Shown here: one piece after another, positions 4,414-63,002 of the stretch | How positions within the stretch are numbered: the stretch's first letter is position 1 | Layout of the letters: each line of letters starts with the position of its first letter | Source: Macrostomum lignano | Taxonomy: Eukaryota | Length of the DNA stretch: 64,000 bases | Assembly (NCBI GenBank): GCA_002269645.1 | Contig: NIVC01000337.1 | Span: 186,001-250,000 of the forward strand | Reading direction: 5' to 3' | Program-made: the position numbers and the translations under genes | The notes under the pieces: model-generated | What the model saw: only the letters and a program-made list of their open reading frames with translations | Database searches by the model: none | What the model was told of the DNA's origin: nothing

Positions 4414-4446
<33 letters not shown>

Positions 4447-14966: not shown

Positions 14967-15173
14967 GATTTTTTTTATTTTTCTTCCTCTAATAGTGCTT
15001 GAGCAAAAGGAGCAAGGCAGATAAAAAGTTGACAAAATACAAAATGCAGAGGAAACAAATTTTCTATCTAAAAAACAAAAAAGAAAAGTGAAAATTTTCT
15101 CAGGGTACAAGCAAAGTTTCTAGAAGTATGCTGAAGCGATTTAAACTTCAAGAAAATTTTCAGTTTTTAAAGT

Positions 15174-21205: not shown

Positions 21206-21328
21206 CTAGACTGTTTAGATTTTTAAAAAACACCGGAAAATCAATCGTTATGTATCAACCCTCTCCTACCTGTAGCACAGCCTCAATTGTATTAAGACGC
21301 CAACATCAAAATTGCTCAAGCCTACAGG

Positions 21329-21883
21329 CTACAGCTGCACAACGCAGGTGTAAGGCGAGCCTTCGGCCGCGGTCGCGGTGCCCAGTCGGCACGCCCTGGC
21401 ACGCCAATACGGCCGGCAGATGATGGTGAAGATGACGCAGGCGGTGATGAGCAGTATGACGCCCAGAATCAGCATGAAGATTGCGCACGGTCTGACCCAC
21501 TGGTGCTGCTGCTGCAGCTGCTGGTCCAAGGTGAAGGCGCCGCCAATGACAATGAGGCAGGTGGAGCCGGGGAACACGAGCAGGATGGAGAGCACGCACA
21601 GCATCAGGCTGTTGCCGCTCTCGTTAGTGAGGAAATCGTCAACCGTGTCCATGGGGCCAAGCCGGGCCCGCTGGCGCGACTCCCCCAGCGCCTTCTTGGC
21701 CTTGGCCCGGCCGCCTACTCGACCTCCTTGACCGCCGCCGCTGCCGCAGCTGCTGCTGACTTGTTGAAAATCGCGTCGACTTGCGCCACCGGCGTAGGCA
21801 TCGCTGTCCATTGTGCGCGGATGCGGGTAGCTGTACTTTGAGGACGAGGCTCGGTCCCATTGCTCGGATTGGTAATGCTGCAT
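21329..21883 (-). CDS. Uncharacterised 184-aa membrane protein with two predicted TM helices
   Basis: GC-rich ORF from a real ATG; hydrophobic segments LMLCVLSILLVFPGSTCLIVIGGAF and CAIFMLILGVILLITACVIFTIIC, followed by a basic RPYWRAR stretch. Confidence 0.65.
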   Translation of the reverse strand: MQHYQSEQWDRASSSKYSYPHPRTMDSDAYAGGASRRDFQQVSSSCGSGGGQGGRVGGRAKAKKALGESRQRARLGPMDTVDDFLTNESGNSLMLCVLSILLVFPGSTCLIVIGGAFTLDQQLQQQHQWVRPCAIFMLILGVILLITACVIFTIICRPYWRARACRLGTATAAEGSPYTCVVQL

Positions 21884-36000: not shown

Positions 36001-38186
36001 CCATGATAGGCTAGATTAGCAATCCATTCTATTCCTGCATCCATGATAGGCTAGATTAACAATCCATTCTACTCCTGCATCCATGATAGGCTAGATTAGC
36101 AATCCATTCTATTCCTGCATCCATGATAGGCTAGATTAGCAATCCATTCTATTCCTGCATCCATGATAGGCTAGATTAGCAATCCATTCTATTCCTGCAT
36201 CCATGATAGGCTAGGCTAGATTAGCAATCCATTCTACTCCTGCACCCATGATAGGCTAGATTAGCAATCTATTCTACTCCTGCATCCATGATAGGCTAGA
36301 TTAGCAATCCATTCTACTCCTGCATCCATGATAGGCTAGACTAGCAATCCATTCTACTCCTGCATCCATGATAGGCTAGATTAGCAATCCATTCTATTCC
36401 TGCACCCATGATAGGCTAGATTAGCAATCCATTCTATTCCTGCATCCATGATAGGCTAGGCTAGATTAGCAATCCATTCTATTCCTGCATCCATGATAGG
36501 CTAGATTAGCAATCCATTCTATTCCTGCACCCATGATAGGCTAGATTAGCAATCCATTCTATTCCTGCATCCATGATAGGCTAGGCTAGATTAGCAATCC
36601 ATTCTATTCCTGCACCCATGATAGGCTAGATTAGCAATCCATTCTATTCCTGCATCCATGATAGGCTAGGCTAGATTAGCAATCCATTCTATTCCTGCAT
36701 CCATGATAGGCTAGATTAGCAATCCATTCTATTCCTGCATCCATGATAGGCTAGATTAGCAATCCATTCTATTCCTGCACCCATGATAGGCTAGATTAGC
36801 AATCCATTGTATTCCTGCATCCATGATACGCTAGATTAGCAATCCATTCTATTCCTGCATCCATGATAGGCTAGATTAGCAATCCATTCTACTCCTGCAT
36901 CCATGATAGGCTAGATTAGCAATCCATTCTATTCCTGCATCCAAGACTGGCAAGATTAGCAATCCATTCTACTCCTTCCTTAACCGCCATCTGCCAGCTG
37001 GTGCCGGACTTCGACCCAGCCACCGGGCGGTACTCGGAGCTGCAGAAGGGGAAGCCGCACGACGTGAAAGTAGAGCGGTGGATCACCGAAGATGGAGAAA
37101 TGCAGGAGGTGAGGCAGCGCATTGAATGATGCAGGTGGTTTCAGTGCATGCGGGTTCAAATTTGCGCTCCACTTCAACTTCAACTGGTCGTTGAACTAAT
37201 AGCAACTGAGGATCTGGGAGGCTGGCCCAGCAAATGAGGATCTGGGAGGCTGGGCCAGCAACTGAGGATCTGGGAGGCTGTGGCCCAGCAACTAAGGATC
37301 TGGAAGGCTGGCCCAGCAACTGAGGATCTGGGAGGCTGGCCCAGCAACTGAGGATCTGGGAGAGCAGTAGTGGTCAGCAAATGAGGATCTGGGAGGCTGG
37401 CCCAGCAACTGAGGATTGGGAGGCTGTGGCCCAGCAACTGAGGATCTGGGAGGCTGGCCCAGCAACTGAGGATCTGGGAGGCTGGCCCAGCAACTGAGGA
37501 TCTGGGAGGCTGTGGCCCAGCAACTGAGGATCTGGGAGGCTAGCCCAGCAACTGAGGATCTGGGAGGCTGGCCCAGCAATTAAGGATCTGGGAGGCTGTG
37601 GCCCAGCAGTTGAGGATCTGGAAGGCTGGCCCAGCAACTGAGGATCTGGAAGGCTGGCCCAGCAACTGAGGATCTGGGAGGCTGGCCCAGCAACTGAGGA
37701 TCTGGGAGGCTGGCCCAACAACTGAGGATCTGGGAGGCTGTGGCCCAGCAACTGAGGATCTGGAAGGCTGGCCCAGCAATTAAGGCTCTAGGAGGCTGGC
37801 CCAGCAACTCAGGATCTGGGAGGCTGGCTTAGCAACTGAGGATCTGGGAGGCTGGCCCAGCAACTGAGGATCTGGGAGGCTGGCCCAGCAACTGAGGATC
37901 TGGGAGGCTGGCCCAGCAACTGAGGATCTGGGAGGCTGGCCCAGCAATTAAGGATCTGGGAGGCTGGCCCAGCAACTGAGGATCTGGGAGGCTGGCCCAG
38001 CAACTGAGGATCTGGGAGGCTGGCCCAGCAACTGAGGATCTGGGAGGCTGGTATCACGGATTACTCAATCTTGATCTCGCCGAGCCAAAGTACCTGCTCA
38101 CAAACAATCACAATTGGCCTCTATTTCAGCTGGTGAAAATCATCGACAAGGACGTTCAATACACCAGAGTCTATGAACGATATTAG
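33090..38186 (+). CDS. FABP: Fatty acid-binding protein (FABP/iLBP family), 137 aa
   Basis: Exons 33090-33159, 35079-35254, 36998-37108 and 38130-38186, with the family intron phases 1,0,0. [31 protein letters not shown]...[18 protein letters not shown]...TRVYERY*; C-terminal R-x-Y ligand motif retained. Confidence 0.9.
33330..34975. repeat. FABP intron 1 purine-rich minisatellite (GAGAGAAGTAGACACGGATT and GAGCGGTAGACATGTTTT units, higher-order blocks)
   Basis: Direct periodicity; source of the long minus-strand S/L-rich ORFs. Confidence 0.95.
35330..36970. repeat. FABP intron 2 minisatellite, 40-bp unit CTAGATTAGCAATCCATTCTATTCCTGCATCCATGATAGG, about 41 copies
   Basis: Direct periodicity. 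Confidence 0.95.
37200..38050. repeat. FABP intron 3 minisatellite, 28-bp unit CTGGGAGGCTGGCCCAGCAACTGAGGAT, about 30 copies
   Basis: Direct periodicity. Confidence 0.95.
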
Positions 38187-38607
38187 CGAGCCCGTGAGCG
38201 ACTTTGCTGCCGAGAACCTGTCACCTTCTGTCTGTCTGTCAATCAATTTGCAATCGCACCACACCAAAACATTTTTAACGACCCAAATTCAAGAACTAAT
38301 AAATTCCATCGCCATTTCTAAGAAATATACAAATAAGGGAATTAGAAACATGTCACGTGACAACTGATTGAGCTCATACTCTAATGCTACTACTCGGAAG
38401 CATATATAACCATAATGTTCTCTACATTTTTTCGTTTACTAGCAGCGAAATAAGCATATAGGCATAATAATTCAATATAAATCATCGTAGAAACGACACT
38501 GGCAGTCCAAGCCAGTGCTTTATTATCGTTATAACAAACTGCTCAGTGCAGTTTGCGCTCAGAACGGTGGTCTGCCTGAGGCAGCTCCGCAGCCAGCTAG
38601 CTCCAAC

Positions 38608-38680
38608 TCAGTAGAAGAACTTGTAGATGAAGAAGGCCGCCACCGCCAGGCCGATGGGAACCAGCAAGCCGATCACGGAG
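38608..38680 (-). pseudogene. Duplicated copy of the cytochrome b5 terminal (tail-anchor) exon
   Basis: Same [23 protein letters not shown] exon as 41660-41588, with its acceptor intact. Confidence 0.8.
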
Positions 38681-38724
38681 CTGCCGGGTGGCGGGTAGGT
38701 GACAGAGTGATGTACATACAGAAT

Positions 38725-41707
38725 GTAGACACGGATTGAGCGGTAGACATGTTTTGAGAGAAGTAGACACGGATTGAGAGAAGTAGACACGGATTGAGCG
38801 GTAGACATGTTTTGAGAGAAGTAGATACGGATTGAGAGAGGTAGACACGGATTGAGAGAAGTAGACACGGATTGAGCGGTAGACATGTTTTGAGAGAAGT
38901 AGATACGGATTGAGAGAGGTAGACACGGATTGAGAGAAGTAGACACGAATTGAGAGAGGTAGACACGGATTGAGAGAAGTAGACACGGATTGAGCGGTAG
39001 ACATGTTTTGAGAGAAGTAGATACGGATTGAGAGAAGTAGACACGGATTGAGAGTAGACACGAACTGAGAGAGGTAAACACATTTATAGAAGTAGACAAA
39101 AATTAGGAGGAGTAGATAAGAATTGGGAGAGGTAGACGCGGATTGAGCGGTAGACATGGATTGAGAGAAGTAGATACGGATTGAGAGATACGAATTGAGA
39201 AGTGAATAGTTAAGACTGCCACAAATTGAGGCCACCGTAACCTACTTGAAGTAGTCACTTAAGAGTAGAAATTATTTTGCAGATGTCGGCTTTATTTTGC
39301 GCAAAGCGGCCGCCATGGCAACCGTCTACCTGGACTACCAGAAAGCGGACGACGGCACCTGGATCATCGATTGGCAGCTCGCCTTCAAGAAAGGTCAAAT
39401 CCGATTCCAACTGGGACAGGAGATCGACGCTGTGATGCCCGACGATAGGAGCGTTAGGGTGAGTTGCAGCAGTCCATCAAAGTACTAATCCGCGCATGCT
39501 GGCTCCGCATTTGTGATTTGTTCCTCCTGTTTGGCTAGACTAGCAATCCATTCTACTCCTGCATCCATGATAGGCTAGATTAGCAATCCATTCTATTCCT
39601 GCATCCATGATAGGCTAGATTAGCAATCCATTCTATTCCTGCATCCATGATAGGCTAGATTAGCAATCCATTCTACTCCTGCATCCATGATAGGCTAGAC
39701 TAGCAATCCATTCTACTCCTGCATCCATGATAGGCTAGATTAGCAATCCATTCTATTCCTGCACCCAAGATAGGCTAGATTAGCAATCCATTCTATTCCT
39801 GCATCCATGATAGGCTAGATTAGCAATCCATTCTATTCCTGCATCCATGATAGGCTAGATTAGCAATCCATTCTATTCCTGCACCCATGATAGGCTAGAT
39901 TAGCAATCCATTCTATTCCTGCATCCATGATAGGCTAGGCTAGATTAGCAATCCATTCTATTCCTGCACCCATGATAGGCTAGATTAGCAATCCATTCTA
40001 TTCCTGCATCCATGATAGGCTAGGCTAGATTAGCAATCCATTCTATTCCTGCATCCATGATAGGCTAGATTAGCAATCCATTCTATTCCTGCATCCATGA
40101 TAGGCTAGATTAGCAATCCATTCTATTCCTGCACCCATGATAGGCTAGATTAGCAATCCATTGTATTCCTGCATCCATGATACGCTAGATTAGCAATCCA
40201 TTCTATTCCTGCATCCATGATAGGCTAGATTAGCAATCCATTCTACTCCTGCATCCATGATAGGCTAGATTAGCAATCCATTCTATTCCTGCATCCAAGA
40301 CTGGCAAGATTAGCAATCCATTCTACTCCTTCCTTAACCGCCATCTGCCAGCTGGTGCCGGACTTCGACCCAGCCACCGGGTGGTACTCGGAGCTGCAGA
40401 AGGGGAAGCCGCACGACGTGAAAGTAGAGCGGTGGATCACCGAAGATGGAGAAATGCAGGAGGTGAGGCAGCGCATTGAATGATGCAGGTGGTTTCAGTG
40501 CATGCGGGTTCAAATTTGCGCTCCACTTCAACTTCAACTGGTCGTTGAACTAATAGCAACTGAGGATCTGGGAGGCTGGCCCAGCAACTGAGGATCTGGG
40601 AGGCTGGCCCAGCAACTGAGGATCTGGAAGGCTGGCCCAGCAACTGAGGATCTGGAAGGCTGGCCCAGCAACTGAGGATCTGGGAGGCTGGCCCAGCAAC
40701 TGAGGATTGGGAGGCTGTGGCCCAGCAACTGAGGATCTGGAAGGCTGGCCCAGCAATTAAGGCTCTAGGAGGCTGGCCCAGCAACTCAGGATCTGGGAGG
40801 CTGGCTTAGCAACTGAGGATCTGGGAGGCTGGCCCAGCAACTGAGGATCTGGGAGGCTGGCCCAGCAACTGAGGATCTGGGAGGCTAGCCCAGCAACTGA
40901 GGATCTGGGAGGCTGGCCCAGCAATTAAGGATCTGGGAGGCTGGCCCAGCAACTGATGATCTGGAAGCTGGCCCAGCAACTGAGGATCTGGGAGGCTGGC
41001 CCAGCAACTGGGGATCTGGGAGGCTGGTATCACGGATTACTCAATCTTGATCTCGCCGAGCCAAAGTACCTGCTCACAAACAATCACAATTGGCCTCCAT
41101 TTCAGCTGGTGAAAATCATCGACAAGGACGTTCAATACACCAGAGTCTATGTACGATATTAGCGAGCCCGTGAGCGACTTTGCTGCCAAGAACCTGTCAC
41201 CTTCTGTCTGTCTGTGAATCAATTTACAATCGCACCGCACCATAACATTTTTAACGACCCAAATTCAAGAACTAATAAATTCCATCGCCATTTCTAATAA
41301 ATATACAAATAAGGGAATTAGAAACATGTCACGTGACAACTGATTGAGCTCATACTCTAATGCTACTAATCGGAAGCATACATAACCATAATGTTCTCTA
41401 CATTTTTTCGTTTACTAGCAGCGAAATAAGCATATAGGCATAATAATTCAATATAAATCATCGTAGAAACGACACTGGCAGTCCAAGCCAGTGCTTTATT
41501 ATCGTTATAAAAAACTGCTCAGTGCGGTTGGCGCTCAGAACGGCGGTCTGCCTGAGGCAGCTCCGCAGCCAGCCAGCCAGCTCCAACTCAGTAGAAGAAC
41601 TTGTAGATGAAGAAGGCCGCCACCGCCAGGCCGATGGGAACCAGCAAGCCGATCACGGAGCTGCCGGGTGGCGGGTAGGTGACAGAGTGATGTACATACA
41701 GAATGTA
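38725..41707. repeat. Second unit of a tandem segmental duplication (first unit about 34500-38727)
   Basis: Near-identical unique sequences in the same order; junction CAGAAT-GTA-GACACGG with 3-bp GTA microhomology. Its internal arrays (38725-39195, 39533-40330, 40555-41025) are shorter than in unit 1. Confidence 0.9.
39283..41162 (+). pseudogene. Second copy of FABP exons 2-4 without its own exon 1 (pseudogene or alternative 3' cassette)
   Basis: Exons 39283-39458, 40352-40462 and 41106-41162 with intact splice sites; differ from copy 1 by L>M, R>W and E>V. Confidence 0.8.
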
Positions 41708-44700
41708 AACTCATGTAAAATGTGCACTCACACAGAAAGTGCACTTATAGAAAATGTGCACTCACACAGAATGTGCACTCACACAGAATGTGCACTCACA
41801 CAGAATGTGCACTCACACAGAATGTGCACTTATAGAAAATGTGCACTCACACAGAATGTGCACTCACACAGAATGTGCACTCACACAGAATGTGCACTCA
41901 CACAGAATGTGCACTCACACAGAATGTGCACTCACACAGAATGTGCACTCACACAGAATGTGCACTCACACAGAATGTGCACTCACACAGAATGTGCACT
42001 CACACAGAATGTGCACTCACACAGAATGTGCACTCACACAGAATGTGCACTCACACAGAATGTGCACTCACACAGAATGTGCACTCACACAGAATGTGCA
42101 CTTACACCGCTCAATCCCAGTCCTCCTTCAACTCACCCGGGGCCCGAAGATTTGCCGGCAGACTCTGAGCTCGGCTTGCTTGGCTTCGGCTCCTTCTCCA
42201 CCACCTCGCCGATCAGGTACTTGGCCATGAGCTCCCGGGCGTCCGTCGAGTGGCCGACGTCTTCGAACGGCTCGGTCGCGTAGCCGCCCGCCTGCTCCAG
42301 CAGGACCTCCTCGCCGCCAGGGTGCTGCGGAGTGTTTTAGTCAGCGATTGTGATAGTAAATTATGATCATGTGCGCACAGCGGCTGGGACCTGCGGTCTG
42401 GGGTGGTGATGGCCCAGCAACCGAGGATCTGACAGACTTGCCTAGCAACTGAGGATTGGGAGGCTGTGGCCCAGCAACTGAGGATCTGGAAGGCTGGCCC
42501 AGCAACTGAGGATCTGGGAGGCTGTGGCCCAGCAACTGAGGATCTGGGAGAGCAGTAGTGGTCAGCAAATGAGGATCTGGGAGGCTGGCCCAGCAACTGA
42601 GGATTGGGAGGCTGTGGCCCAGCAACTGAGGATCTGGGAGGCTGGCCCAGCAACTGAGGATCTGGGAGGCTGGCCCAGCAACTGAGGATCTGGGAGAGCA
42701 GTAGTGGTCAGCAAATGAGGATCTGGGAGGCTGGCCCAGCAACTGAGGATTGGGAGGCTGTGGCCCAGCAACTGAGGATCTGGGAGGCTGGCCCAGCAAC
42801 TGAGGATCTGGGAGGCTGGCCCAGCAACTGAGGATCTGGGAGAGCAGTAGTGGTCAGCAAATGAGGATCTGGGAGGCTGGCCCAGCAACTGAGGATCTGG
42901 GAGGCTGTGGCCCAGCAAAGGCCGTAGATAGGTCAGCACAAAAGGCTGCAGAGAAAATGCCAGGACTGACCAGTAAGCACAGGAGAGACAGACAGAGAGA
43001 ATGAGCGGCCAAACAAGCGGACAATGAAATTTCGTTTGAAGGGCAGTCGCCTTTCGTTTTTTAACACTCTTTCCACGAGGACACTGAAGGTCATATGAAT
43101 GGAACTGGCCTGTTAACAGTACTGCACAATTAGTTTTGCTGTGTACTTGTAGATTCAAGTACAGCTCATATGCAGGGTACAGATGGAAACTCTACAGTAG
43201 CACTGAGCTCTGTTACAAATATGCATGTCCCTAATTCACTTCATAACAAAGCTTTAACAAGATCTGTGGCATAGATAGAGTTAGTGGAATGGCCAAGTTA
43301 TTGCTTTTATAAGGGATTCTTCTTGGGGATCATGGCTTTGGGATTATATGACAGATAAAATAAATAGAACTTATTCATTTTTGTTTATCTAAAGACCTAT
43401 TCATGCCTAAAATATAATGGCAGTAGCGTAGCTAGGGGGGATATAGGAATATATCCCCTCCCCCATTTTGATGATTTATAGGAAACGAAAATGAGGTTTT
43501 AAAAAAAGCAAAATAAAGCAGCTTTGACTTAGCAAAATTGCCTAAAATTGGCCTATTTAACTCGTATATTACTAATAAAATGTTTTAAATGATATTTCCA
43601 CAAATTCCTAGTTCCTAAAATGCTCTAGTCAGGATAGATATCTGATAGCTTCATTCTGATTTTAACAAAGTAAAGTTTTTTAGCCAATTTTATTATTTTT
43701 TAAATGCATATTTTAAGCAAAAATGCAAAAAAACTATTTTATTAGTCTGTAATTTTGTCCCTAAAAGTTATCCCCCCTTTTGAAAATCTTAGCTACACCA
43801 TTGTATAATGGTCACTGATCTTTACTTATACTTATAAATTTTTTATAGTTGGAAGAATTTAAAAATTAAATATTATAAGATCCATTTAGAAATCAATATT
43901 GATATCTTTGCATAAATAATCATAAACAAAGATCTATTAGTATAATCTAAAAATTCTAGTAATTTGGTTCAAAGCAATCAATAATGACTTTAAACTAGTT
44001 AAATTAAAATACAATAATTACTTTACTTTTAATTACTTTTAATTTTATTAGACTAGGCTTTACTAGTTTCTATGCGCTTTCTAAGTAGCAATAAATTATT
44101 GCATAGATAGAAGTTACAAATATTTAAAAATAAAATATGGAGACATAATAAAAAAGATATTATACTATACAATTAAAACTTAATGCAGCATATTAAGCAG
44201 TTGTATAAATTGATTAATCTTTATAATTATGTTTTATAAATCTTTTCCAAGCCAGAATCTAGACTAACATTTCTAATATTAATTGATTATTTATTAATTA
44301 GAAAAGATGTATTTTATTAATTGGTAGGCCTATACAATGTAGTTCTCTAGATAGATAGATATTTTTATCCAAATTGACTTAGATTTCTGATTGCAAAATA
44401 GTATAGTATAGATCAGGACAAATCAACTGCTTTTAGAAAAAAGTAACATTGCATACTACTTCAAATCAAATTGATTGCTTTTAATAATTAATGGTATAAA
44501 ACTAATCAGTAATCACTAAGAATCAGTTACAAGAGATAAAACTGATTAATGTAGCATTATGAGATAATTTTATACAACTCTTCATAATAGCAGTCTTGAA
44601 GTGAGTTAAGCTTTTGTGTTTCTGCACATTTTATCAAGCCAAGAAAGAAATCCAAAGGATGACTTTAATGACTGCCCTTATTACTATCTTTAACTACTAC

Positions 44701-44932
44701 TAGGTCTACCCTGTTGTTGGCTTTTACTTTGTAAATCTAAAGTTCTTACTCTAGAAGTAATAAATTTTTTACTAGCTTGCACTCAATGAAAATCTATATT
44801 ATGGCGCAGCTCACTTACCTCTTCAAGAAACTTCGTGACATCATACACTTTGTCGTTGATCACCAGCCAACAGCTTTCTGATGATTTGTGGGCAGCAATT
44901 TCTTGCATTGAGATCTGACGCAGTGAAGACAT
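41588..44932 (-). CDS. CYB5: Cytochrome b5, tail-anchored, 124 aa
   Basis: Exons 44932-44819, 42324-42137 and 41660-41588. [18 protein letters not shown]|[31 protein letters not shown] contains both heme-ligand His motifs (HPGG, GHS); C-terminal TM anchor. Confidence 0.95.
41718..42105. repeat. CYB5 intron 2 minisatellite, 17-bp unit GAATGTGCACTCACACA, about 22 copies
   Basis: Direct periodicity. Confidence 0.95.
42410..42920. repeat. CYB5 intron 1 minisatellite, same 28-bp family as FABP intron 3
   Basis: CTGGGAGGCTGGCCCAGCAACTGAGGAT units plus the shared variant CTGGGAGAGCAGTAGTGGTCAGCAAATGAGGAT. Confidence 0.95.
43421..43803. mobile_element. hAT-superfamily non-autonomous element (MITE), 383 bp
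   Basis: Imperfect TIRs CAGTAGCGTAGCTAG / CAATGGTGTAGCTAAG (reverse complement of the right end), flanked by an exact 8-bp TSD TATAATGG (43413-43420 and 43804-43811). Confidence 0.8.
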
Positions 44933-47588: not shown

Positions 47589-47595
47589 TATAAAA
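47589..47595 (+). promoter_or_regulatory. TATA box of the repeat-protein gene
   Basis: TATAAAA about 75 bp upstream of ATG 47669. Confidence 0.55.
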
Positions 47596-47668
47596 GCAAC
47601 CAGCTCTAAGCTACAATTCGCCACTTTACACTCTCAGAAAATCTCCAACCGCATTCTCCAACTCTGCA

Positions 47669-50605
47669 ATGGTACTCAGACAGCCCGCCATGCTAAGCTG
47701 TTTTCTAGCCGTCATCGCTTGCTACATCATTACTACTACAGCCGACTGCGAGGAAGTCAGCAATGCGAATAGGGTAATAATCAGGTATCCACCATCTAGA
47801 TGGATCAGGTACGGAGGCAATGCCGAGAGCATGTCGAGAAGGATCAGGATCGGAGGCAACGCCAAGAGCATGTCGAGAAGGATCAGGATCGGAGGCAACG
47901 CCAAGAGCATGTCGAGAAGGATCAGGATCGGAGGAAACGCCAAGAGCACGTCGAGAAGGATCAGGATCGGAGGAAACGCCAAGAGCATGTCGAGAAGGAT
48001 CAGGATCGGAGGCAACGCCAAGAGCATGTCGAGAAGGATCAGGATCGGAGGCAACGCCAAGAGCATGTCGAGAAGGATCAGGATCGGAGGCAACGCCAAG
48101 AGCATGTCGAGAAGGATCAGGATCGGAGGCAACGCCAAGAGCATGTCGAGAAGGATCAGGATCGGAGGCAACGCCAAGAGCATGTCGAGAAGGATCAGGA
48201 TCGGAGGCAACGCCAAGAGCATGTCTAGAAGGATCAGGATCGGAGGCAACGCCAAGAGCATGTCGAGAAGGATCAGGATCGGAGGCAACGCCAAGAGCAT
48301 GTCGAGAAGGATCAGGATCGGAGGCAACGCCAAGAGCATGTCGAGAAGGATCAGGATCGGAGGAAACGCCAAGAGCATGTCTAGAAGGATCAGGATCGGA
48401 GGAAACGCCAAGAGCATGTCTAGAAGGATCAGGATCGGAGGCAACGCCAAGAGCATGTCTAGAAGGATCAGGATCGGAGGCAACGCCAAGAGCATGTCGA
48501 GAATAATCAGGATCGGAGGCAACGCCAAGAGCATGTCGAGAATAATCAGGATCGGAGGCAACGCCAAGAGCACGTCGAGAAGGATCAGGATCGGAGGCAA
48601 CGCCAAGAGCATGTCGAGAAGGATCAGGATCGGAGGCAACGCCAAGAGCATGTCTAGAAGGATCAGGATCGGAGGAAACGCCAAGAGCATGTCGAGAAGG
48701 ATCAGGATCGGAGGAAACGCCAAGAGCATGTCGAGAAGGATCAGGATCGGAGGCAACGCCAAGAGCATGTCGAGAAGGATTAGGATCGGAGGCAACGCCA
48801 AGAGCATGTCGAGAAGGATCAGGATCGGAGGAAACGCCAAGAGCATGTCGAGAAGGATCAGGATCGGAGGCAACGCCAAGAGCATGTCTAGAAGGATCAG
48901 GATCGGAGGCAACGCCAAGAGCATGTCGAGAAGGATCAGGATCGGAGGCAACGCCAAGAGCATGTCGAGAAGGATCAGGATCGGAGGCAACGCCAAGAGC
49001 ATGTCGAGAAGAATCAGGATCGGAGGCAATGCCAAGAGCATGTCTAGAAGGATCAGGATCGGAGGCAACGCCAAGAGCATGTCTAGAAGGATCAGGATCG
49101 GAGGCAACGCCAAGAGCATGTCTAGAAGGATCAGGATCGGAGGAAACGCCAAGAGCATGTCGAGAAGGATCAGGATCGGAGGCAACGCCAAGAGCATGTC
49201 GAGAAGGATCAGGATCGGAGGCAACGCCAAGAGCATGTCGAGAAGGATCAGGATCGGAGGCAACGCCAAGAGCATGTCTAGAAGGATCAGGATCGGAGGC
49301 AACGCCAAGAGCATGTCGAGAAGGATTAGGATCGGAGGCAACGCCAAGAGCATGTCTAGAAGGATCAGGATCGGAGGCAACGCCAAGAGCATGTCTAGAA
49401 GGATCAGGATCGGAGGCAACGCCAAGAGCATGTCTAGAAGGATCAGGATCGGAGGCAACGCCAAGAGCATGTCGAGAAGGATCAGGATCGGAGGAAACGC
49501 CAAGAGCATGTCTAGAAGGATCAGGATCGGAGGCAACGCCAAGAGCATGTCGAGAAGGATCAGGATCGGAGGCAACGCCAAGAGCATGTCTAGAAGGATC
49601 AGGATCGGAGGAAACGCCAAGAGCATGTCGAGAAGGATCAGGATCGGAGGCAACGCCAAGAGCACGTCGAGAAGGATCAGGATCGGAGGAAACGCCAAGA
49701 GCATGTCGAGAAGGATCAGGATCGGAGGCAACGCCAAGAGCATGTCGAGAAGGATCAGGATCGGAGGCAACGCCAAGAGCATGTCGAGAAGGATCAGGAT
49801 CGGAGGAAACGCCAAGAGCATGTCGAGAAGGATCAGGATCGGAGGCAACGCCAAGAGCATGTCGAGAAGGATCAGGATCGGAGGCAACGCCAAGAGCATG
49901 TCGAGAAGGATCAGGATCGGAGGCAACGCCAAGAGCATGTCTAGAAGGATCAGGATCGGAGGCAACGCCAAGAGCATGTCGAGAAGGATCAGGATCGGAG
50001 GCAACGCCAAGAGCATGTCTAGAAGGATCAGGATCGGAGGCAACGCCAAGAGCATGTCTAGAAGGATCAGGATCGGAGGCAACGCCAAGAGCATGTCTAG
50101 AAGGATCAGGATCGGAGCCAACGCCAAGAGCATGTCGAGAAGGATCAGGATCGGAGGCAACGCCAAGAGCATGTCGAGAAGGATCAGGATCGGAGGCAAC
50201 GCCAAGAGCATGTCTAGAAGGATCAGGATCGGAGGAAACGCCAAGAGCATGTCGAGAAGGATCAGGATCGGAGGCAACGCCAAGAGCATGTCGAGAAGGA
50301 TCAGGATCGGAGGCAACGCCAAGAGCATGTCTAGAAGGATCAGGATCGGAGGCAACGCCAAGAGCATGTCGAGAAGGATCAGGATCGGAGGAAACGCCAA
50401 GAGCATGTCTAGAAGGATCAGGATCGGAGGAAACGCCAAGAGCATGTCTAGAAGGATCAGGATCGGAGGCAACGCCAAAAGCATGTCTAGAAGGATCAGG
50501 ATCGGAGGCAACGCCAAGAGCATGTCTAGAAGGATCAGGATCGGAGGAAACGCCAAGAGCATGTCGAGAAGGATCAGGATCGGAGGCAACGCCAAGGGCA
50601 TCTGA
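47669..50605 (+). CDS. Secreted cationic tandem-repeat protein / putative polyprotein precursor, 978 aa, 71 x (RRIRIGGNAKSMS) plus one degenerate unit
   Basis: Single exon; ATG, signal-peptide-like MLSCFLAVIACYIITTTADC, short unique pro-region, 39-bp in-frame units and stop. Most variant positions are synonymous in this frame (GGC/GGA, TCG/TCT, ATC/ATT, AAC/AAT, AGG/AGA, AAG/AAA). TATA upstream and AATAAA downstream. Confidence 0.85.
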   Translation: MVLRQPAMLSCFLAVIACYIITTTADCEEVSNANRVIIRYPPSRWIRYGGNAESMSRRIRIGGNAKSMSRRIRIGGNAKSMSRRIRIGGNAKSTSRRIRIGGNAKSMSRRIRIGGNAKSMSRRIRIGGNAKSMSRRIRIGGNAKSMSRRIRIGGNAKSMSRRIRIGGNAKSMSRRIRIGGNAKSMSRRIRIGGNAKSMSRRIRIGGNAKSMSRRIRIGGNAKSMSRRIRIGGNAKSMSRRIRIGGNAKSMSRRIRIGGNAKSMSRRIRIGGNAKSMSRIIRIGGNAKSMSRIIRIGGNAKSTSRRIRIGGNAKSMSRRIRIGGNAKSMSRRIRIGGNAKSMSRRIRIGGNAKSMSRRIRIGGNAKSMSRRIRIGGNAKSMSRRIRIGGNAKSMSRRIRIGGNAKSMSRRIRIGGNAKSMSRRIRIGGNAKSMSRRIRIGGNAKSMSRRIRIGGNAKSMSRRIRIGGNAKSMSRRIRIGGNAKSMSRRIRIGGNAKSMSRRIRIGGNAKSMSRRIRIGGNAKSMSRRIRIGGNAKSMSRRIRIGGNAKSMSRRIRIGGNAKSMSRRIRIGGNAKSMSRRIRIGGNAKSMSRRIRIGGNAKSMSRRIRIGGNAKSMSRRIRIGGNAKSMSRRIRIGGNAKSMSRRIRIGGNAKSMSRRIRIGGNAKSTSRRIRIGGNAKSMSRRIRIGGNAKSMSRRIRIGGNAKSMSRRIRIGGNAKSMSRRIRIGGNAKSMSRRIRIGGNAKSMSRRIRIGGNAKSMSRRIRIGGNAKSMSRRIRIGGNAKSMSRRIRIGGNAKSMSRRIRIGGNAKSMSRRIRIGANAKSMSRRIRIGGNAKSMSRRIRIGGNAKSMSRRIRIGGNAKSMSRRIRIGGNAKSMSRRIRIGGNAKSMSRRIRIGGNAKSMSRRIRIGGNAKSMSRRIRIGGNAKSMSRRIRIGGNAKSMSRRIRIGGNAKSMSRRIRIGGNAKSMSRRIRIGGNAKGI

Positions 50606-50714
50606 GGTTGTAGCAGTTTGTGAAATTTCTGCAATCCATGAATTTTCGACTTGCGATCTGTTTTAACTCTAACTTGTTTTTGAGGCACTAATTTGGTTTT
50701 GGTTTTATTCTTTT

Positions 50715-50720
50715 AATAAA
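50715..50720 (+). terminator. Polyadenylation signal of the repeat-protein gene
   Basis: AATAAA about 110 bp after the stop, in an AT-rich 3' UTR. Confidence 0.5.
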
Positions 50721-52812: not shown

Positions 52813-53861
52813 CCTAAGCAAAAATTGTTTTGTACTGAAAGATTTTCGTTCGTCTGTTCCAAATGTATCGTACTACATGAGTTCCATTTTTAGCGCGAAC
52901 GGCTAATGCTGCATATCCTGAAGGAATGGTACATGGATTGCTCTTGATTTGCTTCAAATTTAACAAACATTTCATTCTAAAACTATTGTTATTTGAAGTC
53001 ATTATCACGAGTGAAATATGGCTCTTATTCATGAGCTGCTTTCAGAGTTGCAGTTGATAGAATGCGGTGCAAAAATAATTAGGCTCAAGAATGATTACAG
53101 CGACTACAGAAATACAGCGTAATTGCCTGCAATTTAAGTGAGATGAGATTGAGAATCGCACCACAGTCGAACCACTGTAACACTGAGCTCAGAGACTGTT
53201 GAGACAGCTTCTCTCTCAAGTTTCATTTGCAATTAAATTTGTACCTTTCAAGTGTCAATCGTGCTCAAACTGTCATAACAGGCAAACAGTCATTGTGCGA
53301 CAACCGCTGTGACCTTCGGGCTCCAAATGCTTTCTACACTGCGCGCCTCTCATCGTTTGTAAAGCCACGCGAAATGCAAATTTCAGCTCATGGGCCTCGT
53401 CTGAGGACTTGGCGGTGTGGCAATCAACGAAGCCTGCAGTTGCAGCGCGTGCTCAAAGCTACGCAAAACTCAGTTTGAGCACTCAGTATACTATAAGCTA
53501 CTCTTTGCAACAAAAATAGACTGCTGCATCGTTGTATTAATTTTGAGTGTAACTCAGAGTCCATACACCGATGTATATATATATGCTATAAATATGCTGT
53601 TCTCAACTTCAAATAGATCTGGCGTATCTGTAGCACATAGTCTGAAGTTTTTTTTCAAGTTACAGGAAATGTCGGGCAATAGCCATTTTGACGAGACTCG
53701 TAAGTTCAGGCCGAAATTTGTTTAACTTCGTATCTGATTGTGTGTCTAAAAAATTCCATAAGTGCATATAATACGCTCGGAAGTGTAGTACGAGCGACTT
53801 CATAAAAAAACGGATTATTCTATGAGCACCGGTCAGGTGCACTTTTGAAGACTAGTTCCTA

Positions 53862-54462
53862 TGAAGAACCATTTGGTGTTCCGATGAAGAACCATTTTGG
53901 TGTTCCTGTGAATAACAATTTTGGTGTTCCTGTGAAGAACCATTTTGGTGTTCCTGTGAATAACAATTTTGGTGTTCCTGTGAAGAACCATTTTGGTGTT
54001 CCTGTGAAGAACAATTTTGGTGTTCCTGTGAAGAACCATTTTGGTGTTCCTGTGAAGAACCATTTTGGTGTTCCTGTGAAGAACAATTTTGGTGTTCCTG
54101 TGAAGAACCATTTTGGTGTTCCTGTGAATAACCATTTTGGTGTTCCTGTGAAGAACAATTTTGGTGTTCCTGTGAAGAACCATTTTGGTGTTCCTGTGAA
54201 GAACCATTTTGGTGTTCCTGTGAAGAACCATTTTGGTGTTCTTGTGAATAACCATTTTGGTGTTCTTGTGAAGAACCATTTTGGTGTTCCTGTGAATAAC
54301 CATTTTGGTGTTCTTGTGAATAACCATTTTGGTGTTCCTGTGAAGAACCATTTTGGTGTTCCTGTGAATAACCATTTTGGTGTTCTTGTGAAGAACCATT
54401 TTGGTGTTCCTGTGAAGAACCATTTTGGTGTTCCTGTGAATAACCATTTTGGTGTTTCTGTG
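53862..54462. repeat. Minisatellite, 24-bp unit TTTTGGTGTTCCTGTGAAGAACCA, about 25 copies
   Basis: Direct periodicity; possibly inside intron 1 of the EF-hand gene. Confidence 0.95.
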
Positions 54463-54695
54463 AAAAGTTCGTTGGTTGCTACTACATGTCATGGTTATTT
54501 AGAAGCATATGTTACTTTATCAAGGTACAACCAAGAAACGACATTGGATAAGCTTAATTATGAATTTTTAAACCGCACGTACTCAGCTACGCGTGTGCAT
54601 TCAATAAAATTATTGAAATAACTTTTCAATCATTTTTCAATGCCAATTCCGTCATTCATTTCATTAAAACAATTATCCCCAACAACCCGTCGACG

Positions 54696-55990
54696 ATGCC
54701 AGAGGTGCGAAAAGTGTTCCGCGCCATCGACAAGACCGGCAGAGGCGGCATCACCGTGCAGGAGCTCTGCCAGGTGATGAAGAGAATCGGCGAGGACGTC
54801 ACGGAGGCTGATGCTAGGAATATTGTTGGCCAGGCAGATACCAAAGGTAACTGGATCTGTTTCTGTCTGTCTCTTATTAATTAAATAAGCCATCTCGGAC
54901 CCAGCACATGCTACGTAGCTTTATGAGAAAGTAACGGATTGCATGCTAACACGACATGCTCAAAATGTAGGTTAGCGATCTCGCTAATGTGTTCGCATCG
55001 CATCGCAAGCGAAATTGAGCCTTCAGATAAAATGTCCAAAAAACGCGAGTCCTACGTCCTGGTAGAAAGGGAACTTCTAGTGGTCCTTGTAGATGAAAAT
55101 GCCACCTCCAACCGCGTACATACTGGCGTCGCGTAATCATCTGAAGTTTCAGAAGATGGTTAATCTAATTATTGCTATCTGCATATCTGCGCATTTCAGG
55201 ATCCGGCATGATAACGGAGGATGACTTCATCAGCTACATGCAGTCGAGATCAGCTGACTTCAATCAGCTGTTGCGAGACGCATTTCAAGCCATGGACATC
55301 AAAAAGACCGGCTTCCTAACGCATGTATGTAGGGATGCCCAATTTAAACTGCTTTGCTTCCACAGAGATTGCAGCCACCCAGCTCATCATTTTTACCTTG
55401 CTTTCAGTCCCAACTGCGCGCCGGATTCGCCAAAGCAGGGATGAAGCTATCGGCGGAGGAGCTCAAACAGATGCTGTCGGTTGTGGATGCGGACAATACG
55501 GGAAAGATCAGTTGGGAGGGTGAGAAATAAAACTTCTAGTATTGCAGCTCTTTAAAAATCAAGTTTAAGGGGACTAAGAAAGGTGAAACTTGTCCGGGTG
55601 AAGTTTGATGCAATTGTGTCTATTTGAGTTGGTCAATGTTGGTTTAGCCCGTGACGTATATAGTGAGTGTCGGTTGGAGTAGAAATGGAGGGACGGGGTA
55701 TGGCGTGAGGTGGGTGTCGATTGGGGTAGGAATGGAGGGACACGGCGTGAGGTGGGTGTCGATTGGGGTAGGAATGGAGGGACGCGGTATGGCGTGAGGT
55801 GGGTGTCGATTGGGGTAGAAATGGAGGGACGCGGTATGGCGTGAGGTGGGTGCCGATTGGAATGGGGTTTGGTGTAGATAGGTGGTGGGCGTTAACTGAG
55901 GTAGAAATCTGACAAAGCAAAAAAAATTGTAGGTGAACATCTGTGTGAACTTATTTTGAAATTACAGAGTTTCTCAAGGTCACCCAGTGA
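54696..55990 (+). CDS. Calmodulin-like four-EF-hand protein, about 136 aa
   Basis: Exons 54696-54846, 55200-55324, 55408-55519 and 55968-55990; loops DKTGRGGITVQE, DTKGSGMITEDD, DIKKTGFLTHSQ, DADNTGKISWEE. An alternative start is a micro-exon ATGAGCACCG (53822-53831) spliced to AG at about 54703. Confidence 0.85.
55670..55860. repeat. Intronic minisatellite, about 47-bp unit, about 4 copies
   Basis: GGTATGGCGTGAGGTGGGTGTCGATTGGGGTAGGAATGGAGGGAC repeated. Confidence 0.85.
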
Positions 55991-56615: not shown

Positions 56616-57011
56616 TCATTTGCTAATGGTGAAATCGGCAAAGGGGCAGTCGGTGCTGGGGCCCTCATCCGTGAACACGGCCTTGTCAATGCGGCTCTTA
56701 GGGCTGCCTTTGGTTCTCAGCCAGCGCTTGAACTCCTCCAGCTGCGGCGCGGGCCCGCAAGCCTCGCCGAGCACCGTTCCGTGCTCCGTGTTGAGCACGT
56801 AGCCGACCAGACCAAGCCGGCGCGCCTCCCGCTCAGTGTGCTTGCGAAAGAAGACGCCCTGCACTTTGCCGTGGATTTCGAATTTCACATGGTGCAGCGG
56901 GCCGTCCAATTTTGTGACTGGCGCGGCGGCTGCGGCTGGGGGGCGCGAGGCGCGGGCAGCACGCGGCACCGGGACAGATCTGGCGGCGCCTGACTTGCCT
57001 ACAGCGGACAT
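56616..57011 (-). CDS. ACYP: Acylphosphatase, 131 aa, with an Ala/Pro-rich N-terminal extension
   Basis: VKFEIHGKVQGVFFRKHT...GLVGYVLNTEHGTVLGEACG...GSPKSRID: signature GxVQGVxFR and catalytic Asn are present. Confidence 0.92.
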   Translation of the reverse strand: MSAVGKSGAARSVPVPRAARASRPPAAAAAPVTKLDGPLHHVKFEIHGKVQGVFFRKHTEREARRLGLVGYVLNTEHGTVLGEACGPAPQLEEFKRWLRTKGSPKSRIDKAVFTDEGPSTDCPFADFTISK

Positions 57012-57808
57012 CTTGGAAGACTGGAACGTGGGATGAAGAGTCAAGAAATCTACAGATTGTTTATTAATAAATTTTAAAACAATATTAAATTCACAAACTC
57101 ATGAATTACTATTAGTAGCGCGAATGAATTTTAAGAGCTTCAAAACAAAATTATCAAGCCAAAAATATCTGTTTGATTTAGTACTGAAAAGGTGGGACTG
57201 AAAATTAACACTAACCTTACAAATAGCAAACACAAATGTACTAAAATTTTGTAAGGGGCATCAATATATTTGCCTACTGCTAAGTGACTTTGAAGACTAT
57301 TTTTTATTGTAATTAAATTTGTAAGAACTTATATTAATTTGTGAATTGATAGTATACAAAATCCAAAGTATAAAGTATATAAAGTGTTATTAATAGTATT
57401 ATTAATTATAATAAGCCAAATACTATACATAGTAGGCAAAAAACAACTAATCATATCAATCTCTGTGTAGGCTTAGTAAACAGTAACAATAGTTACTGAC
57501 AAGAGAATAATGAAAAATTTAAAGTAAGAAAGAGTAAAAAAGTAAAATTAATAAAAAAATTTTTTTAAGCATATAGAAGTTGCTATACTTTTTTTAATGA
57601 GAATAAACTGTATTTTGTATAGAAATAAAAAAACTTGTTTAGACTTTGCTGATGATTATTGCAAGTTTTAATTTGTTTGTAATTTGTTTGTAATTGTTAC
57701 TTAATTGTGATTGATTTTGATAAATTGATTTATAGAATAAAATAAGAAATTATTTTTTAAGAGTAGTATACAAAAGGAGTTATTGACAAAAGAGAAAACA
57801 ATAGTGGC

Positions 57809-59517: not shown

Positions 59518-63002
<3,485 letters not shown>

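What the first reader, a model, noticed from the sequence alone, without database searches (positions are those of the whole stretch)
47669..50605. Secreted polyprotein of about 72 near-identical cationic 13-mers with RR processing sites
Seen: a single-exon 978-aa ORF with a TATA box, signal-peptide-like N terminus, short pro-region, one degenerate unit (IRYGGNAESMS) and 71 units of RRIRIGGNAKSMS. The canonical repeats contain no acidic residue and carry +4 per unit. Established: dibasic RR is the prohormone-convertase/furin-type site used in neuropeptide and antimicrobial-peptide precursors; K/R-rich repeat proteins also occur in flatworm adhesives (Mlig-ap1, a different sequence). Inference: either a precursor releasing about 70 copies of IRIGGNAKSMS (no Gly-basic amidation signal, so not a classical amidated neuropeptide) or an uncleaved polycationic glue, mucus or antimicrobial polymer. 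I do not recognise the family.
Basis: partly seen in the sequence, partly recalled or inferred. Interest (0 to 1): 0.8.

Follow-up and report, generated by a model that had tools for sequence, protein, structure and literature searches.

The report
Unannotated flatworm gene: secreted polycationic 13-mer repeats
A 2.9-kb stretch of the flatworm Macrostomum lignano genome looks like a real but unannotated, lineage-restricted gene for a secreted, extremely positively charged protein made of 71 copies of one 13-residue unit; there is no expression data, and it is unresolved whether the protein is cut into about 70 peptides or works as one long polycation.

Summary
ORF 47669-50605 (+) encodes 978 aa: a signal-peptide-like N terminus, an 18-aa unique stretch, one degenerate unit and 71 units of RRIRIGGNAKSMS, exactly 39 nt apart. 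The window is Macrostomum lignano. Minisatellites fill 38% of it, and 11 of 33 arrays have an open frame, so an ORF alone proves nothing. What sets this array apart:

- 6 of 9 variable columns are synonymous in this frame (P about 0.004-0.025). Control arrays show no such excess.
- The four synonymous unit types make up 61 of 70 units. Replacement variants stay at 1-3 copies.
- TATAAAA lies 74 nt upstream, there is no upstream ATG, the Kozak context is purine -3/G +4, and AATAAA lies 110 nt past the stop.

No expression data could be reached. The only relative is a second M. lignano copy buried in a chimeric gene model. I estimate about 0.75-0.8 that this is a real gene for a secreted 105-kDa polycation (+282 net charge).

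RR processing is not supported: Ile follows every basic site, there are no acidic spacers and no amidation Gly, and the protein is five times longer than flatworm prohormones. I favour an intact polyanion-binding polymer (0.47) over a 70-copy peptide precursor (0.27) or a chance ORF (0.2).

The parts
47589..47595 (+). TATAAAA box, 74 nt upstream of the ATG
   Evidence: There are only 10 TATAAAA on the + strand of the 64-kb window (0.14 per kb per strand). The chance of one falling in a 70-bp promoter-proximal window is about 1%.
47596..47668 (+). Putative core promoter/5' UTR. It contains no upstream ATG. An AG at 47636-47637 was used as a splice acceptor by the chimeric gene model P0001. Start context is gcaATGg (G at -3, G at +4).
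   Evidence: Sequence read. P0001 reads this stretch in frame as SKSPTAFSNSA.
47669..47743 (+). Start codon and signal-peptide-like segment, residues 1-25 (MVLRQPAMLSCFLAVIACYIITTTA). It has a 14-residue uncharged hydrophobic core. Small residues at -3/-1 allow cleavage after Ala25 (TTA|DC) or Ala17.
   Evidence: Heuristic: 5 of 101 window ORFs pass and 11 of 557 (2%) ORFs from shuffled sequence pass. SignalP was not available.
47744..47797 (+). Unique region, residues 26-43 (DCEEVSNANRVIIRYPPS). It holds three of the four acidic residues and the only Cys. Its 3' half is a strongly decayed partial unit.
   Evidence: Residues 26-47 are identical in the second copy, P0001.
47798..47836 (+). Degenerate first unit, RWIRYGGNAESMS (5 nt differences from the consensus unit)
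47837..50566 (+). 70 full 39-nt units, consensus AGAAGGATCAGGATCGGAGGCAACGCCAAGAGCATGTCG = RRIRIGGNAKSMS, with no indel
   Evidence: Nine columns vary, and 6 of them are synonymous in this frame. Four synonymous unit types make up 61 of 70 units.
50567..50605 (+). Terminal unit RRIRIGGNAKGI plus the TGA stop (50603-50605) at the array edge
50715..50720 (+). AATAAA polyadenylation-signal hexamer, 110 nt after the stop
   Evidence: Density is 0.85 per kb per strand, so this is weak evidence alone (about 23% chance within 300 nt).

Best explanation
This is an unannotated, lineage-restricted, single-exon protein-coding gene of Macrostomum lignano. It was built by expansion of a 39-bp (13-codon) minisatellite inside a small secretory gene.

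The product enters the secretory pathway through an N-terminal signal peptide. It is a polypeptide of about 105 kDa with net charge about +282, made of 71 RRIRIGGNAKSMS units. Its composition is R 23%; I, G and S 15% each; D+E 4 of 953 residues.

Most likely it is released largely intact, or only coarsely trimmed, from a gland cell and acts as a polycation. The regularly spaced Arg/Lys side chains would bind polyanions (sulfated or carboxylated glycans of mucus, glycocalyx, egg or adhesive secretions, or microbial surfaces). The alternating R-I-R-I strand-like segment and the GGN turn would give each unit an amphipathic character that could promote self-association.

Shown here: the sequence anatomy, the frame-specific pattern of variation, and the absence of relatives outside M. 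lignano. Inferred: transcription, secretion, lack of processing, and polyanion binding.
For: Species: an exact look-up of the window's Tctex-1 ORF hits M. lignano contig NIVC01001238.1, which is collinear with and 95-96% identical to the window. The neighbouring EF-hand protein matches M. lignano A0A1I8IXT4.

Coding, not just an open frame:
- 6 of 9 variable columns are synonymous in frame +0, against 0.21 expected. P = 0.004, or 0.025 if a transition bias raises the expectation to 0.30.
- The two variants that have spread (25 and 16 of 70 units) are both synonymous. Replacement variants are found in 1-3 units.
- Other period-multiple-of-3 arrays with open frames in the same window show no synonymous excess.
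- The other two + frames acquire stops.
- Frame +0 has the best fit to local codon usage, and its GC3 of 0.85 compares with 0.49-0.81 in local exons.

Gene signals independent of the array: TATAAAA at -74, no upstream ATG, a Kozak-like start context, a signal-peptide-like N terminus, and AATAAA at +110. The joint chance is about 6e-6 per array frame. The antisense ORF has no TATA box and no poly(A) signal.

A second copy exists with ATG, hydrophobic core (F>L, I>L, an in-frame 1-codon deletion) and units preserved.

Intact polymer rather than precursor:
- Ile occupies P1' at both candidate basic sites (sequence). An Arg-Arg site followed by an aliphatic residue is reported as unprocessed (PMC9552230).
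- There are no acidic spacers.
- Length is 978 aa.
- M. lignano already uses an extremely cationic secreted repeat protein, Mlig-ap1, whose Lys/Arg repeats bind anionic sugars (PMC6410801).
- AF2 gives 10-residue strands plus 3-residue turns with period 13 at pLDDT 85.7, against pLDDT 45 for a shifted frame of the same DNA.
Against: - No transcript, peptide or in situ evidence could be reached.
- The exact 978-aa and 971-aa products are absent from the 15-billion-protein collection and from the gene index that does hold annotated M. lignano genes. Searches with the N terminus found nothing there.
- The only database relative, P0001, is a junk chimeric ab initio model that also reads antisense exons of cytochrome b5 and acylphosphatase. 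It proves a second genomic copy, not expression.
- Between the two copies the 56-residue N-terminal region has 6 substitutions plus a 1-codon deletion. That is about what 4-5% neutral divergence would give. Tctex-1 has 0 of 229 residues changed between the homeologous loci.
- The synonymous-excess test rests on only 9 variable columns.
- With perhaps 10^5 arrays genome-wide, a chance look-alike somewhere is not impossible.
- The AF2 model is of a kind known to be hallucinated for perfect repeats, with stacked uncompensated charges (PMC11795689). It has no significant PDB match; the best is E = 0.17.
- Nothing tested here shows polyanion binding.
Confidence: 0.47

Rival explanations
1. Polyprotein precursor. 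The secreted pro-protein is cleaved at every basic site by a kexin/furin-type convertase, either after RR (then carboxypeptidase trimming gives about 70 copies of IRIGGNAKSMS, +2) or after RRIR (giving IGGNAKSMSRRI(R), +3/+4). The products would act as a mass-produced signalling, pheromone-like or antimicrobial peptide.
For: - There is a perfectly periodic dibasic RR, and RRIR fits the minimal R-x-x-R furin motif, in every unit behind a signal-peptide-like start.
- Selection appears to act on the whole 13-residue sequence rather than only on composition, as expected if each unit is a discrete bioactive product.
- Subtilisin-like convertases cleave at Lys-Arg/Arg-Arg, and furin at R-x-K/R-R (PMC3061863).
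- Multi-copy peptide precursors are a well-known design (my own knowledge: FMRFamide/Antho-RFamide precursors, apidaecin, antifreeze glycopeptide polyproteins).
Against: - Ile is the P1' residue at both candidate sites, and an aliphatic +1 residue is reported to prevent Arg-Arg processing (PMC9552230 citing Veenstra 2000). Beta-branched P1' residues being disfavoured by convertases is from my own knowledge and was not tested.
- There is no Gly-basic amidation signal.
- There are no acidic spacers or anionic pro-piece to neutralise +282, which cationic-peptide precursors usually carry (own knowledge).
- 978 aa compares with the <200 aa operational limit for planarian prohormones (PMC2953531).
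- Seventy copies would exceed any precursor I know of.
- After RR removal the peptide keeps only +2 and has no amphipathic helix, which makes it a weak antimicrobial candidate.
Confidence: 0.27
2. Non-coding minisatellite. One of the very many tandem arrays of this genome happens to have a period divisible by three, a stop-free unit, and fortuitous flanking ATG, hydrophobic codons, TATA-like and AATAAA-like words. No protein is made.
For: - 38% of the window is tandem arrays, and 11 of 33 have open frames. This array is itself open in three frames, including a 988-aa antisense ORF.
- No annotation, and no homologue outside M. lignano.
- N-terminal divergence between the two copies is near the neutral level.
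- The antisense frame also shows 5 of 9 synonymous variants (P = 0.06). Third-position clustering alone is only P about 0.04.
Against: - Synonymous excess occurs only in this frame and only in this array.
- The spread variants are synonymous and the replacement variants are rare.
- The independent gene signals have a joint chance of about 6e-6 per array frame, or about 1e-4 per window.
- The stop codon sits exactly at the array edge, and the first ATG after the TATA box opens the frame.
- Short-read transcriptomes are known to fail on such repeats in Macrostomum, which explains the missing annotation (PMC8621496).
Confidence: 0.2
3. The antisense ORF is the gene: 47722..50688 (-), 988 aa from GTG or 959 aa from ATG 50601, with repeat DMLLALPPILILL, encoding a hydrophobic repeat protein.
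For: It is stop-free through the whole array. GC3 is 0.85 and 5 of 9 variants are synonymous.
Against: - The high-frequency C21A variant is a Leu/Phe replacement in this frame (16 units), and 22 of 54 variant copies are replacements.
- There is no TATA box upstream and no poly(A) hexamer downstream on the minus strand.
- It has no Pfam match.
- A mirror ORF with high GC3 is expected opposite a codon-biased sense frame.
Confidence: 0.03

Closest known systems
Mlig-ap1, the cohesive protein of the M. lignano temporary adhesive (Wunderer et al. 2019, PMC6410801; PMC8621496)
   Same: It comes from the same species and is secreted. It has very long, extremely cationic tandem low-complexity regions and no homologues outside the lineage. 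It acts through electrostatic binding of anionic sugars. It is hard to assemble from short reads and hard to see by tryptic mass spectrometry.
   Different: Mlig-ap1 is more than 5,000 aa, with GRK/KR-rich regions (for example SRKPRRKNRKSRKP, pI >14) flanking a core of C-type lectin, vWD/C8/TIL and 17 EGF domains. The present protein has no such domain, a different unit, lower charge density (4 of 13), 31% hydrophobic residues and one Cys. No sequence similarity was detected in any search.
Mussel foot protein 1 type tandem-repeat structural polycations (about 75-80 decapeptide repeats AKPSYPPTYK; own knowledge, not tested here)
   Same: A signal peptide is followed almost only by about 70-80 copies of one short basic unit. 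The protein is secreted intact as a surface-active polymer.
   Different: The Mfp-1 mechanism depends on Tyr-to-DOPA and Pro hydroxylation. The unit here has no Tyr or Pro. There is no homology.
Multi-copy peptide precursors: flatworm prohormones (PMC2953531), FMRFamide/Antho-RFamide precursors, apidaecin and Baramicin antimicrobial polyproteins (the last four from own knowledge)
   Same: A signal peptide is followed by iterated identical short units, each bounded by basic residues.
   Different: Those precursors use KR/RR or RxRR sites with permissive P1' residues. They usually carry Gly for amidation and/or acidic spacers, have 2-40 copies, and flatworm ones are <200 aa. Here P1' is Ile, there are no spacers or Gly-basic signal, and there are 71 copies in 978 aa.
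Beta-arc/beta-solenoid repeat proteins with a GGN-type turn (curli CsgA, FapC, phage fibre repeats such as TASITVGGNADSS in P0003)
   Same: A 13-residue period with x-I-x-[IV]-G-G-N-A. The HMMER hits P0002-P0051 share this pattern (E 5e-16 to 1e-3). AF2 predicts stacked strands, and the weak Foldseek hits are solenoids and FapC.
   Different: The hits are heterogeneous (nucleoporin FG repeats, LysM proteins, translations of other minisatellites), so the scores are repeat-amplified convergence rather than homology. A +4 uncompensated charge per 13 residues makes a stable solenoid implausible without counter-ions. AF2 is known to over-predict such folds (PMC11795689).

Membership tests
Flatworm neuropeptide/peptide-hormone prohormone (operational criteria of Collins et al. 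2010, PMC2953531) | N-terminal signal sequence | tested here: met
   It passes a heuristic for an uncharged hydrophobic core plus small residues at -3/-1, with a 2% false-positive rate in shuffles. SignalP was not run.
Flatworm neuropeptide/peptide-hormone prohormone (operational criteria of Collins et al. 2010, PMC2953531) | Basic cleavage sites flanking the predicted peptides, in a context convertases accept | tested here: inconclusive
   RR is present in 69 of 71 units (two units have RI). P1' is Ile at RR|I and at RRIR|I, and an aliphatic +1 residue is reported to block Arg-Arg processing (PMC9552230). Flatworm convertase specificity was not tested.
Flatworm neuropeptide/peptide-hormone prohormone (operational criteria of Collins et al. 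2010, PMC2953531) | Precursor shorter than 200 aa | tested here: not met
   978 aa.
Flatworm neuropeptide/peptide-hormone prohormone (operational criteria of Collins et al. 2010, PMC2953531) | Peptides confirmed by cDNA and mass spectrometry; neuronal expression | not testable with these tools
   No transcriptome, peptidome or in situ data were available. The peptide string is not found in 8.3 million papers.
Mlig-ap1-like flatworm adhesive proteins | Core of C-type lectin, vWD/C8/TIL and EGF domains between the KR/GRK-rich regions (PMC6410801, PMC8621496) | tested here: not met
   Pfam gives no domain, only a sub-threshold Pcf11 RFEGP repeat hit (35.6 bits against a cut-off of 43).
Mlig-ap1-like flatworm adhesive proteins | Extremely cationic Lys/Arg-rich tandem low-complexity region in a secreted protein | tested here: met
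   K+R 286 and D+E 4 in 953 residues. The unit sequence and charge density differ from GRK/SRKPRRKNRKSRKP.
Mlig-ap1-like flatworm adhesive proteins | Expression in adhesive gland cells, presence in footprints, non-adhesive RNAi phenotype | not testable with these tools
   These need experiments.
Cationic antimicrobial-peptide polyprotein (apidaecin/Baramicin type) | Tandem peptide units separated by processed basic or furin sites together with anionic spacers or a pro-piece | tested here: not met
   There are no acidic residues anywhere in the 71 units. The only D/E residues are D26, E28, E29 and E53.
Cationic antimicrobial-peptide polyprotein (apidaecin/Baramicin type) | Infection-inducible expression and antimicrobial activity of the released unit | not testable with these tools
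   These need experiments.
Neutral (non-coding) minisatellite | Unit variants distributed without regard to any reading frame | tested here: not met
   6 of 9 variable columns are synonymous in frame +0 (P 0.004-0.025), and the spread variants are all synonymous. Control arrays show no excess. The sample is small.
Beta-solenoid / functional-amyloid repeat proteins | Stable stacked beta-arc fold with a compensated core | tested here: inconclusive
   AF2 single-sequence pLDDT is 85.7 with period-13 strands, against 45 for the shifted-frame control. There is no significant PDB match, and AF2 is known to hallucinate such folds on perfect repeats (PMC11795689).

The most novel reading that the evidence does not exclude
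The gene is the most highly iterated peptide precursor described so far. A single exon would yield about 70 identical copies of a non-amidated 11-13-residue peptide (IRIGGNAKSMS or IGGNAKSMSRRI) that a free-living flatworm releases in bulk, for example as a waterborne or seminal signal or as a surface antimicrobial. It would be processed at basic sites despite Ile at P1'. It would also be a case of a bioactive-peptide gene born and amplified from a genomic minisatellite.
Probability: 0.25. Interest if true: 0.75.

Novelty: new member of a known kind. Interest (0 to 1): 0.42.

Why it matters
If the gene is expressed, it adds a 105-kDa, +282-charged secreted protein to the toolkit of a model flatworm whose only characterised polycation, Mlig-ap1, is central to reversible underwater adhesion. 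It would be a candidate for glue, mucus, egg or ejaculate chemistry, or for surface defence.

The gene is invisible to the usual pipelines, so similar genes may be systematically missed in repeat-rich genomes:
- Repeat masking removes the array before gene prediction.
- Short-read transcript assembly fails on such repeats.
- Tryptic proteomics would yield only IGGNAK, SMSR and IR.

It also gives a clean example for asking how minisatellite expansion creates coding sequence. In the same 64 kb there are 32 other arrays that show no coding signature and one that does.

Tried and rejected
1. Homology searches.
- Word-indexed searches of 5.8 billion proteins, with the N terminus plus 6 units and with the N terminus alone, found nothing.
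- An exhaustive HMMER scan found one true relative, P0001. The other 50 hits are repeat-amplified look-alikes: nucleoporin FG repeats, LysM proteins and other minisatellite translations.
- Pfam and PDB sequence searches were negative.

2. Exact look-ups. The 978-aa ORF, the Met8 start, the antisense ORF and the frame +1 ORF are not on record.

3. Reaching the homeologous array in NIVC01001238.1.
- The Tctex-1 look-up gives only +/-10 kb and shows no called gene downstream.
- The acylphosphatase ORF, P0001 and P0052 are not in the contig index.
- The DNA-level paralogue comparison therefore could not be done.

4. A metagenome scan for the unit gave 0 hits.

5. A literature search for the peptide gave 0 papers. 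Searches on M. lignano antimicrobial peptides and neuropeptide precursors found nothing matching.

6. P0001 as expression evidence was rejected. It strings together upstream-gene exons, the 5' UTR, frame-shifted array patches, the EF-hand gene, and antisense exons of cytochrome b5 and acylphosphatase.

7. The AF2 beta-structure as evidence of a fold is kept only as a hint (PMC11795689).

8. The antisense ORF as the gene was rejected.

9. Higher-order repeat structure: there is none. Autocorrelation of unit types is flat at 0.15-0.32.


Full report
**What is there**

The ORF at 47669..50605 (+) exists as described and encodes 978 aa. Tandem Repeats Finder reports a single array at 47798-50601 with period 39, 71.9 copies, 97% matches and no indels. 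A 30-nt core of the unit occurs 71 times, always exactly 39 nt apart, and nowhere else in the window.

The protein reads as follows:
- MVLRQPAMLSCFLAVIACYIITTTA (signal-peptide-like)
- DCEEVSNANRVIIRYPPS (unique stretch)
- RWIRYGGNAESMS (decayed unit)
- 70 full units and a terminal RRIRIGGNAKGI followed by TGA

Sixty-five of the 71 units translate to exactly RRIRIGGNAKSMS. If the signal peptide is cleaved after Ala25, the remaining product would be 953 aa and 104.6 kDa, with 286 K+R against 4 D+E, one Cys, two Tyr and one Trp.

**Where it comes from**

The window's Tctex-1 ORF is found, residue for residue, in Macrostomum lignano assembly GCA_002269645.1, contig NIVC01001238.1.
- That contig is not the window itself. 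It is a collinear copy, 95-96% identical in unique sequence and 83-93% identical in the shared minisatellites. It could be a homeolog or an allele.
- Tctex-1 differs at three synonymous sites only between the two copies.
- The EF-hand gene downstream matches M. lignano A0A1I8IXT4.

The array gene sits in a roughly 7-kb gap. Upstream is a + strand gene that ends at 46195. Downstream is the EF-hand gene, whose first exon lies near 53690.

**Why the ORF alone means little**

The window holds 33 tandem arrays covering 38% of its bases. Eleven of them have at least one stop-free frame. The 39-mer array is open in three frames, including a 988-aa antisense ORF. The real question is therefore whether this is a gene or one more minisatellite.

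**Evidence that frame +0 is under selection**

- Nine columns of the 39-nt unit vary among the 70 full units. Six of these variants are synonymous in frame +0, where 21% would be expected. This gives P = 0.004, or 0.025 if a transition bias raises the expectation to 30%.
- The two variants that have spread through the array, G39T in 25 units and C21A in 16, are both synonymous. They occur in all four combinations, which together make 61 of 70 units.
- Replacement variants (M>T, R>I, G>A) sit in one to three units.
- In frames +1 and +2 the same variants are nearly all replacements and create stops.
- In the antisense frame the common C21A variant is a Leu/Phe replacement.
- Control arrays in the same window with periods 24, 27 and 18 and open frames show no synonymous excess.
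- Frame +0 fits local codon usage best. Its GC3 is 0.85, against 0.49-0.81 in eight neighbouring exons.

**Independent gene signals**

- TATAAAA lies at 47589-47595. It is one of ten on this strand in 64 kb.
- No ATG lies between it and the start codon.
- The start context is gcaATGg.
- The N terminus passes a signal-peptide heuristic that 2% of ORFs from shuffled sequence pass.
- AATAAA lies 110 nt after the stop.

Multiplying rough chance rates gives about 6e-6 per array frame, or about 1e-4 for the whole window. That is small even if a genome-wide look-elsewhere effect is allowed for. The antisense ORF has neither a TATA box nor a poly(A) hexamer.

**Relatives**

- Nothing turned up in word-indexed searches, Pfam, PDB sequences, a JGI metagenome scan or the literature.
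- The exhaustive HMMER scan found one true relative, P0001 (UniParc UPI0007A11E81; E = 6e-210).
- P0001 is a chimeric model of a second M. lignano copy of this locus. It joins upstream exons, the 5' UTR read in frame from the AG at 47636-47637, the array with frame-shifted patches, the EF-hand gene, and antisense exons of cytochrome b5 and acylphosphatase. It is not expression evidence.
- P0001 does show a second copy whose start is MVLGQPILSCLLAVLACYIITTTADCEEVSNANRVIIRYPPSRWIRIGGNAKSMS. The ATG, the hydrophobic core and the frame are kept, the one indel is one codon long, and residues 26-47 are identical.
- Against constraint, the six substitutions plus one deletion in 56 residues are about what neutral divergence of 4-5% would produce.
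- The other 50 HMMER hits share only a 13-residue period with an I-x-[IV]-G-G-N-like motif and come from unrelated proteins.

**Missing annotation**

Neither this ORF nor obvious variants are in the collections. This is weak negative evidence. Macrostomum workers report that short-read transcriptomes cannot assemble such repeats, and that Lys/Arg-rich proteins escape tryptic mass spectrometry (PMC8621496, PMC6410801). Trypsin would reduce this protein to IGGNAK, SMSR and IR.

**Mechanism**

*The precursor reading.* Its attraction is the periodic RR, together with RRIR, a minimal furin motif. Several points count against it:
- Ile follows both candidate sites, and an aliphatic +1 residue is reported to prevent Arg-Arg processing (PMC9552230).
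- There is no amidation Gly and no acidic spacer.
- The protein is five times longer than the limit used to define planarian prohormones (PMC2953531).

*The polymer reading.* It has a precedent in the same animal. Mlig-ap1 is a secreted protein whose Lys/Arg repeats bind anionic sugars and provide cohesion, and polyanions or polycations in the water disturb attachment or release (PMC6410801). The present protein shares the principle but not the sequence, the domains or the charge density.

*Structure prediction.* AF2 without an alignment predicts ten-residue strands and three-residue GGN turns with period 13 at pLDDT 85.7. A shifted frame of the same DNA gives pLDDT 45. However, AF2 is known to invent confident solenoids for perfect repeats (PMC11795689). 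Foldseek finds nothing significant. Stacking +4 per 13 residues without counter-ions is physically doubtful. I treat the model only as a hint that the R-I-R-I segment is strand-prone.

**Verdict**

- About 0.75-0.8 that this is a real gene for a secreted polycationic repeat protein.
- Within that, an intact or coarsely processed polyanion-binding polymer is favoured (0.47 overall) over a 70-copy peptide precursor (0.27).
- A chance ORF in a minisatellite remains at about 0.2.
- The antisense ORF is at about 0.03.

It belongs to no known family. As a kind (an orphan, secreted, tandem-repeat protein) it is familiar.

Noticed in passing
window 1-64000: Thirty-three tandem arrays with periods from 4 to 58 nt cover 38% of the window. 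Several lie inside introns of conserved genes. The 28-mers at 8995-9397 are in the DUF498/NDUFAF3 gene. The 24-mer at 53855-54464 is in intron 1 of the EF-hand gene. The 17-mer at 41719-42107 lies just past cytochrome b5 exon 2.
   Followed up: partly
window 33327-38051, 38720-41027 and 42410-42918: There is a segmental duplication inside the window. The same succession of arrays recurs: a 20/58/78-mer GAGAGAAGTAGACACGGATT family, a 40-mer GGCTAGATTAGCAATCC..., and a 28-mer AGCAACTGAGGATCTGGGAGGCTGGCCC. Exon-like segments of an upstream gene map to both copies (36998-37114 and 40352-40468; 38491-38697 and 41467-41577).
   Followed up: partly
window 3901-22550 versus L002 (NIVC01001238.1:197699-218388): The window is not the GenBank contig that carries the identical Tctex-1 protein. 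It is a collinear copy, 95-96% identical in unique DNA and 83-93% identical in the shared arrays. This fits the duplicated M. lignano genome or a different haplotype or assembly. The homeologous array gene should lie about 35 kb from Tctex-1 on that contig.
   Followed up: partly
P0001 (UniParc UPI0007A11E81), mapping to window 36998-62966: A public 1137-aa M. lignano protein model is a chimera of at least five loci. It includes antisense translations of cytochrome b5 exon 2 (42214-42321) and of the acylphosphatase gene (56715-57030), and frame-shifted patches of the 39-mer array.
   Followed up: yes
window 56616-57011 (-), 54696-55520 (+), 44819-44932 and 42172-42327 (-), 59518-59922 (-), 12353-13042 (+), 8533-9972 (+): The neighbouring genes are ordinary: acylphosphatase, an EF-hand/calmodulin-like protein, cytochrome b5, a sulfotransferase-like exon, the Tctex-1 dynein light chain, and DUF498/NDUFAF3. 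Their exons have GC3 of 0.49-0.81, well above the roughly 45% GC of the flanks.
   Followed up: partly
window 14893-14966 (+): A tRNA-Ile (anticodon GAT) gene lies immediately after a 23-mer array (Rfam 66.8 bits; ARAGORN agrees).
   Followed up: no
window 60402-61297: A (CTGT)n microsatellite of 224 copies. A (GA)n-rich stretch lies at 61904-62109 and an 18-mer GAGAGAGCGGAGATCAGG array runs to the window end.
   Followed up: no
P0004 (321 aa, unknown eukaryote-like source): Another database protein carries a 13-residue repeat, ICRNIRIGSGSET, resembling RRIRIGGNAKSMS in its IRIG core. It is probably a translated minisatellite from another organism and not a homologue, but its origin was not checked.
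   Followed up: no
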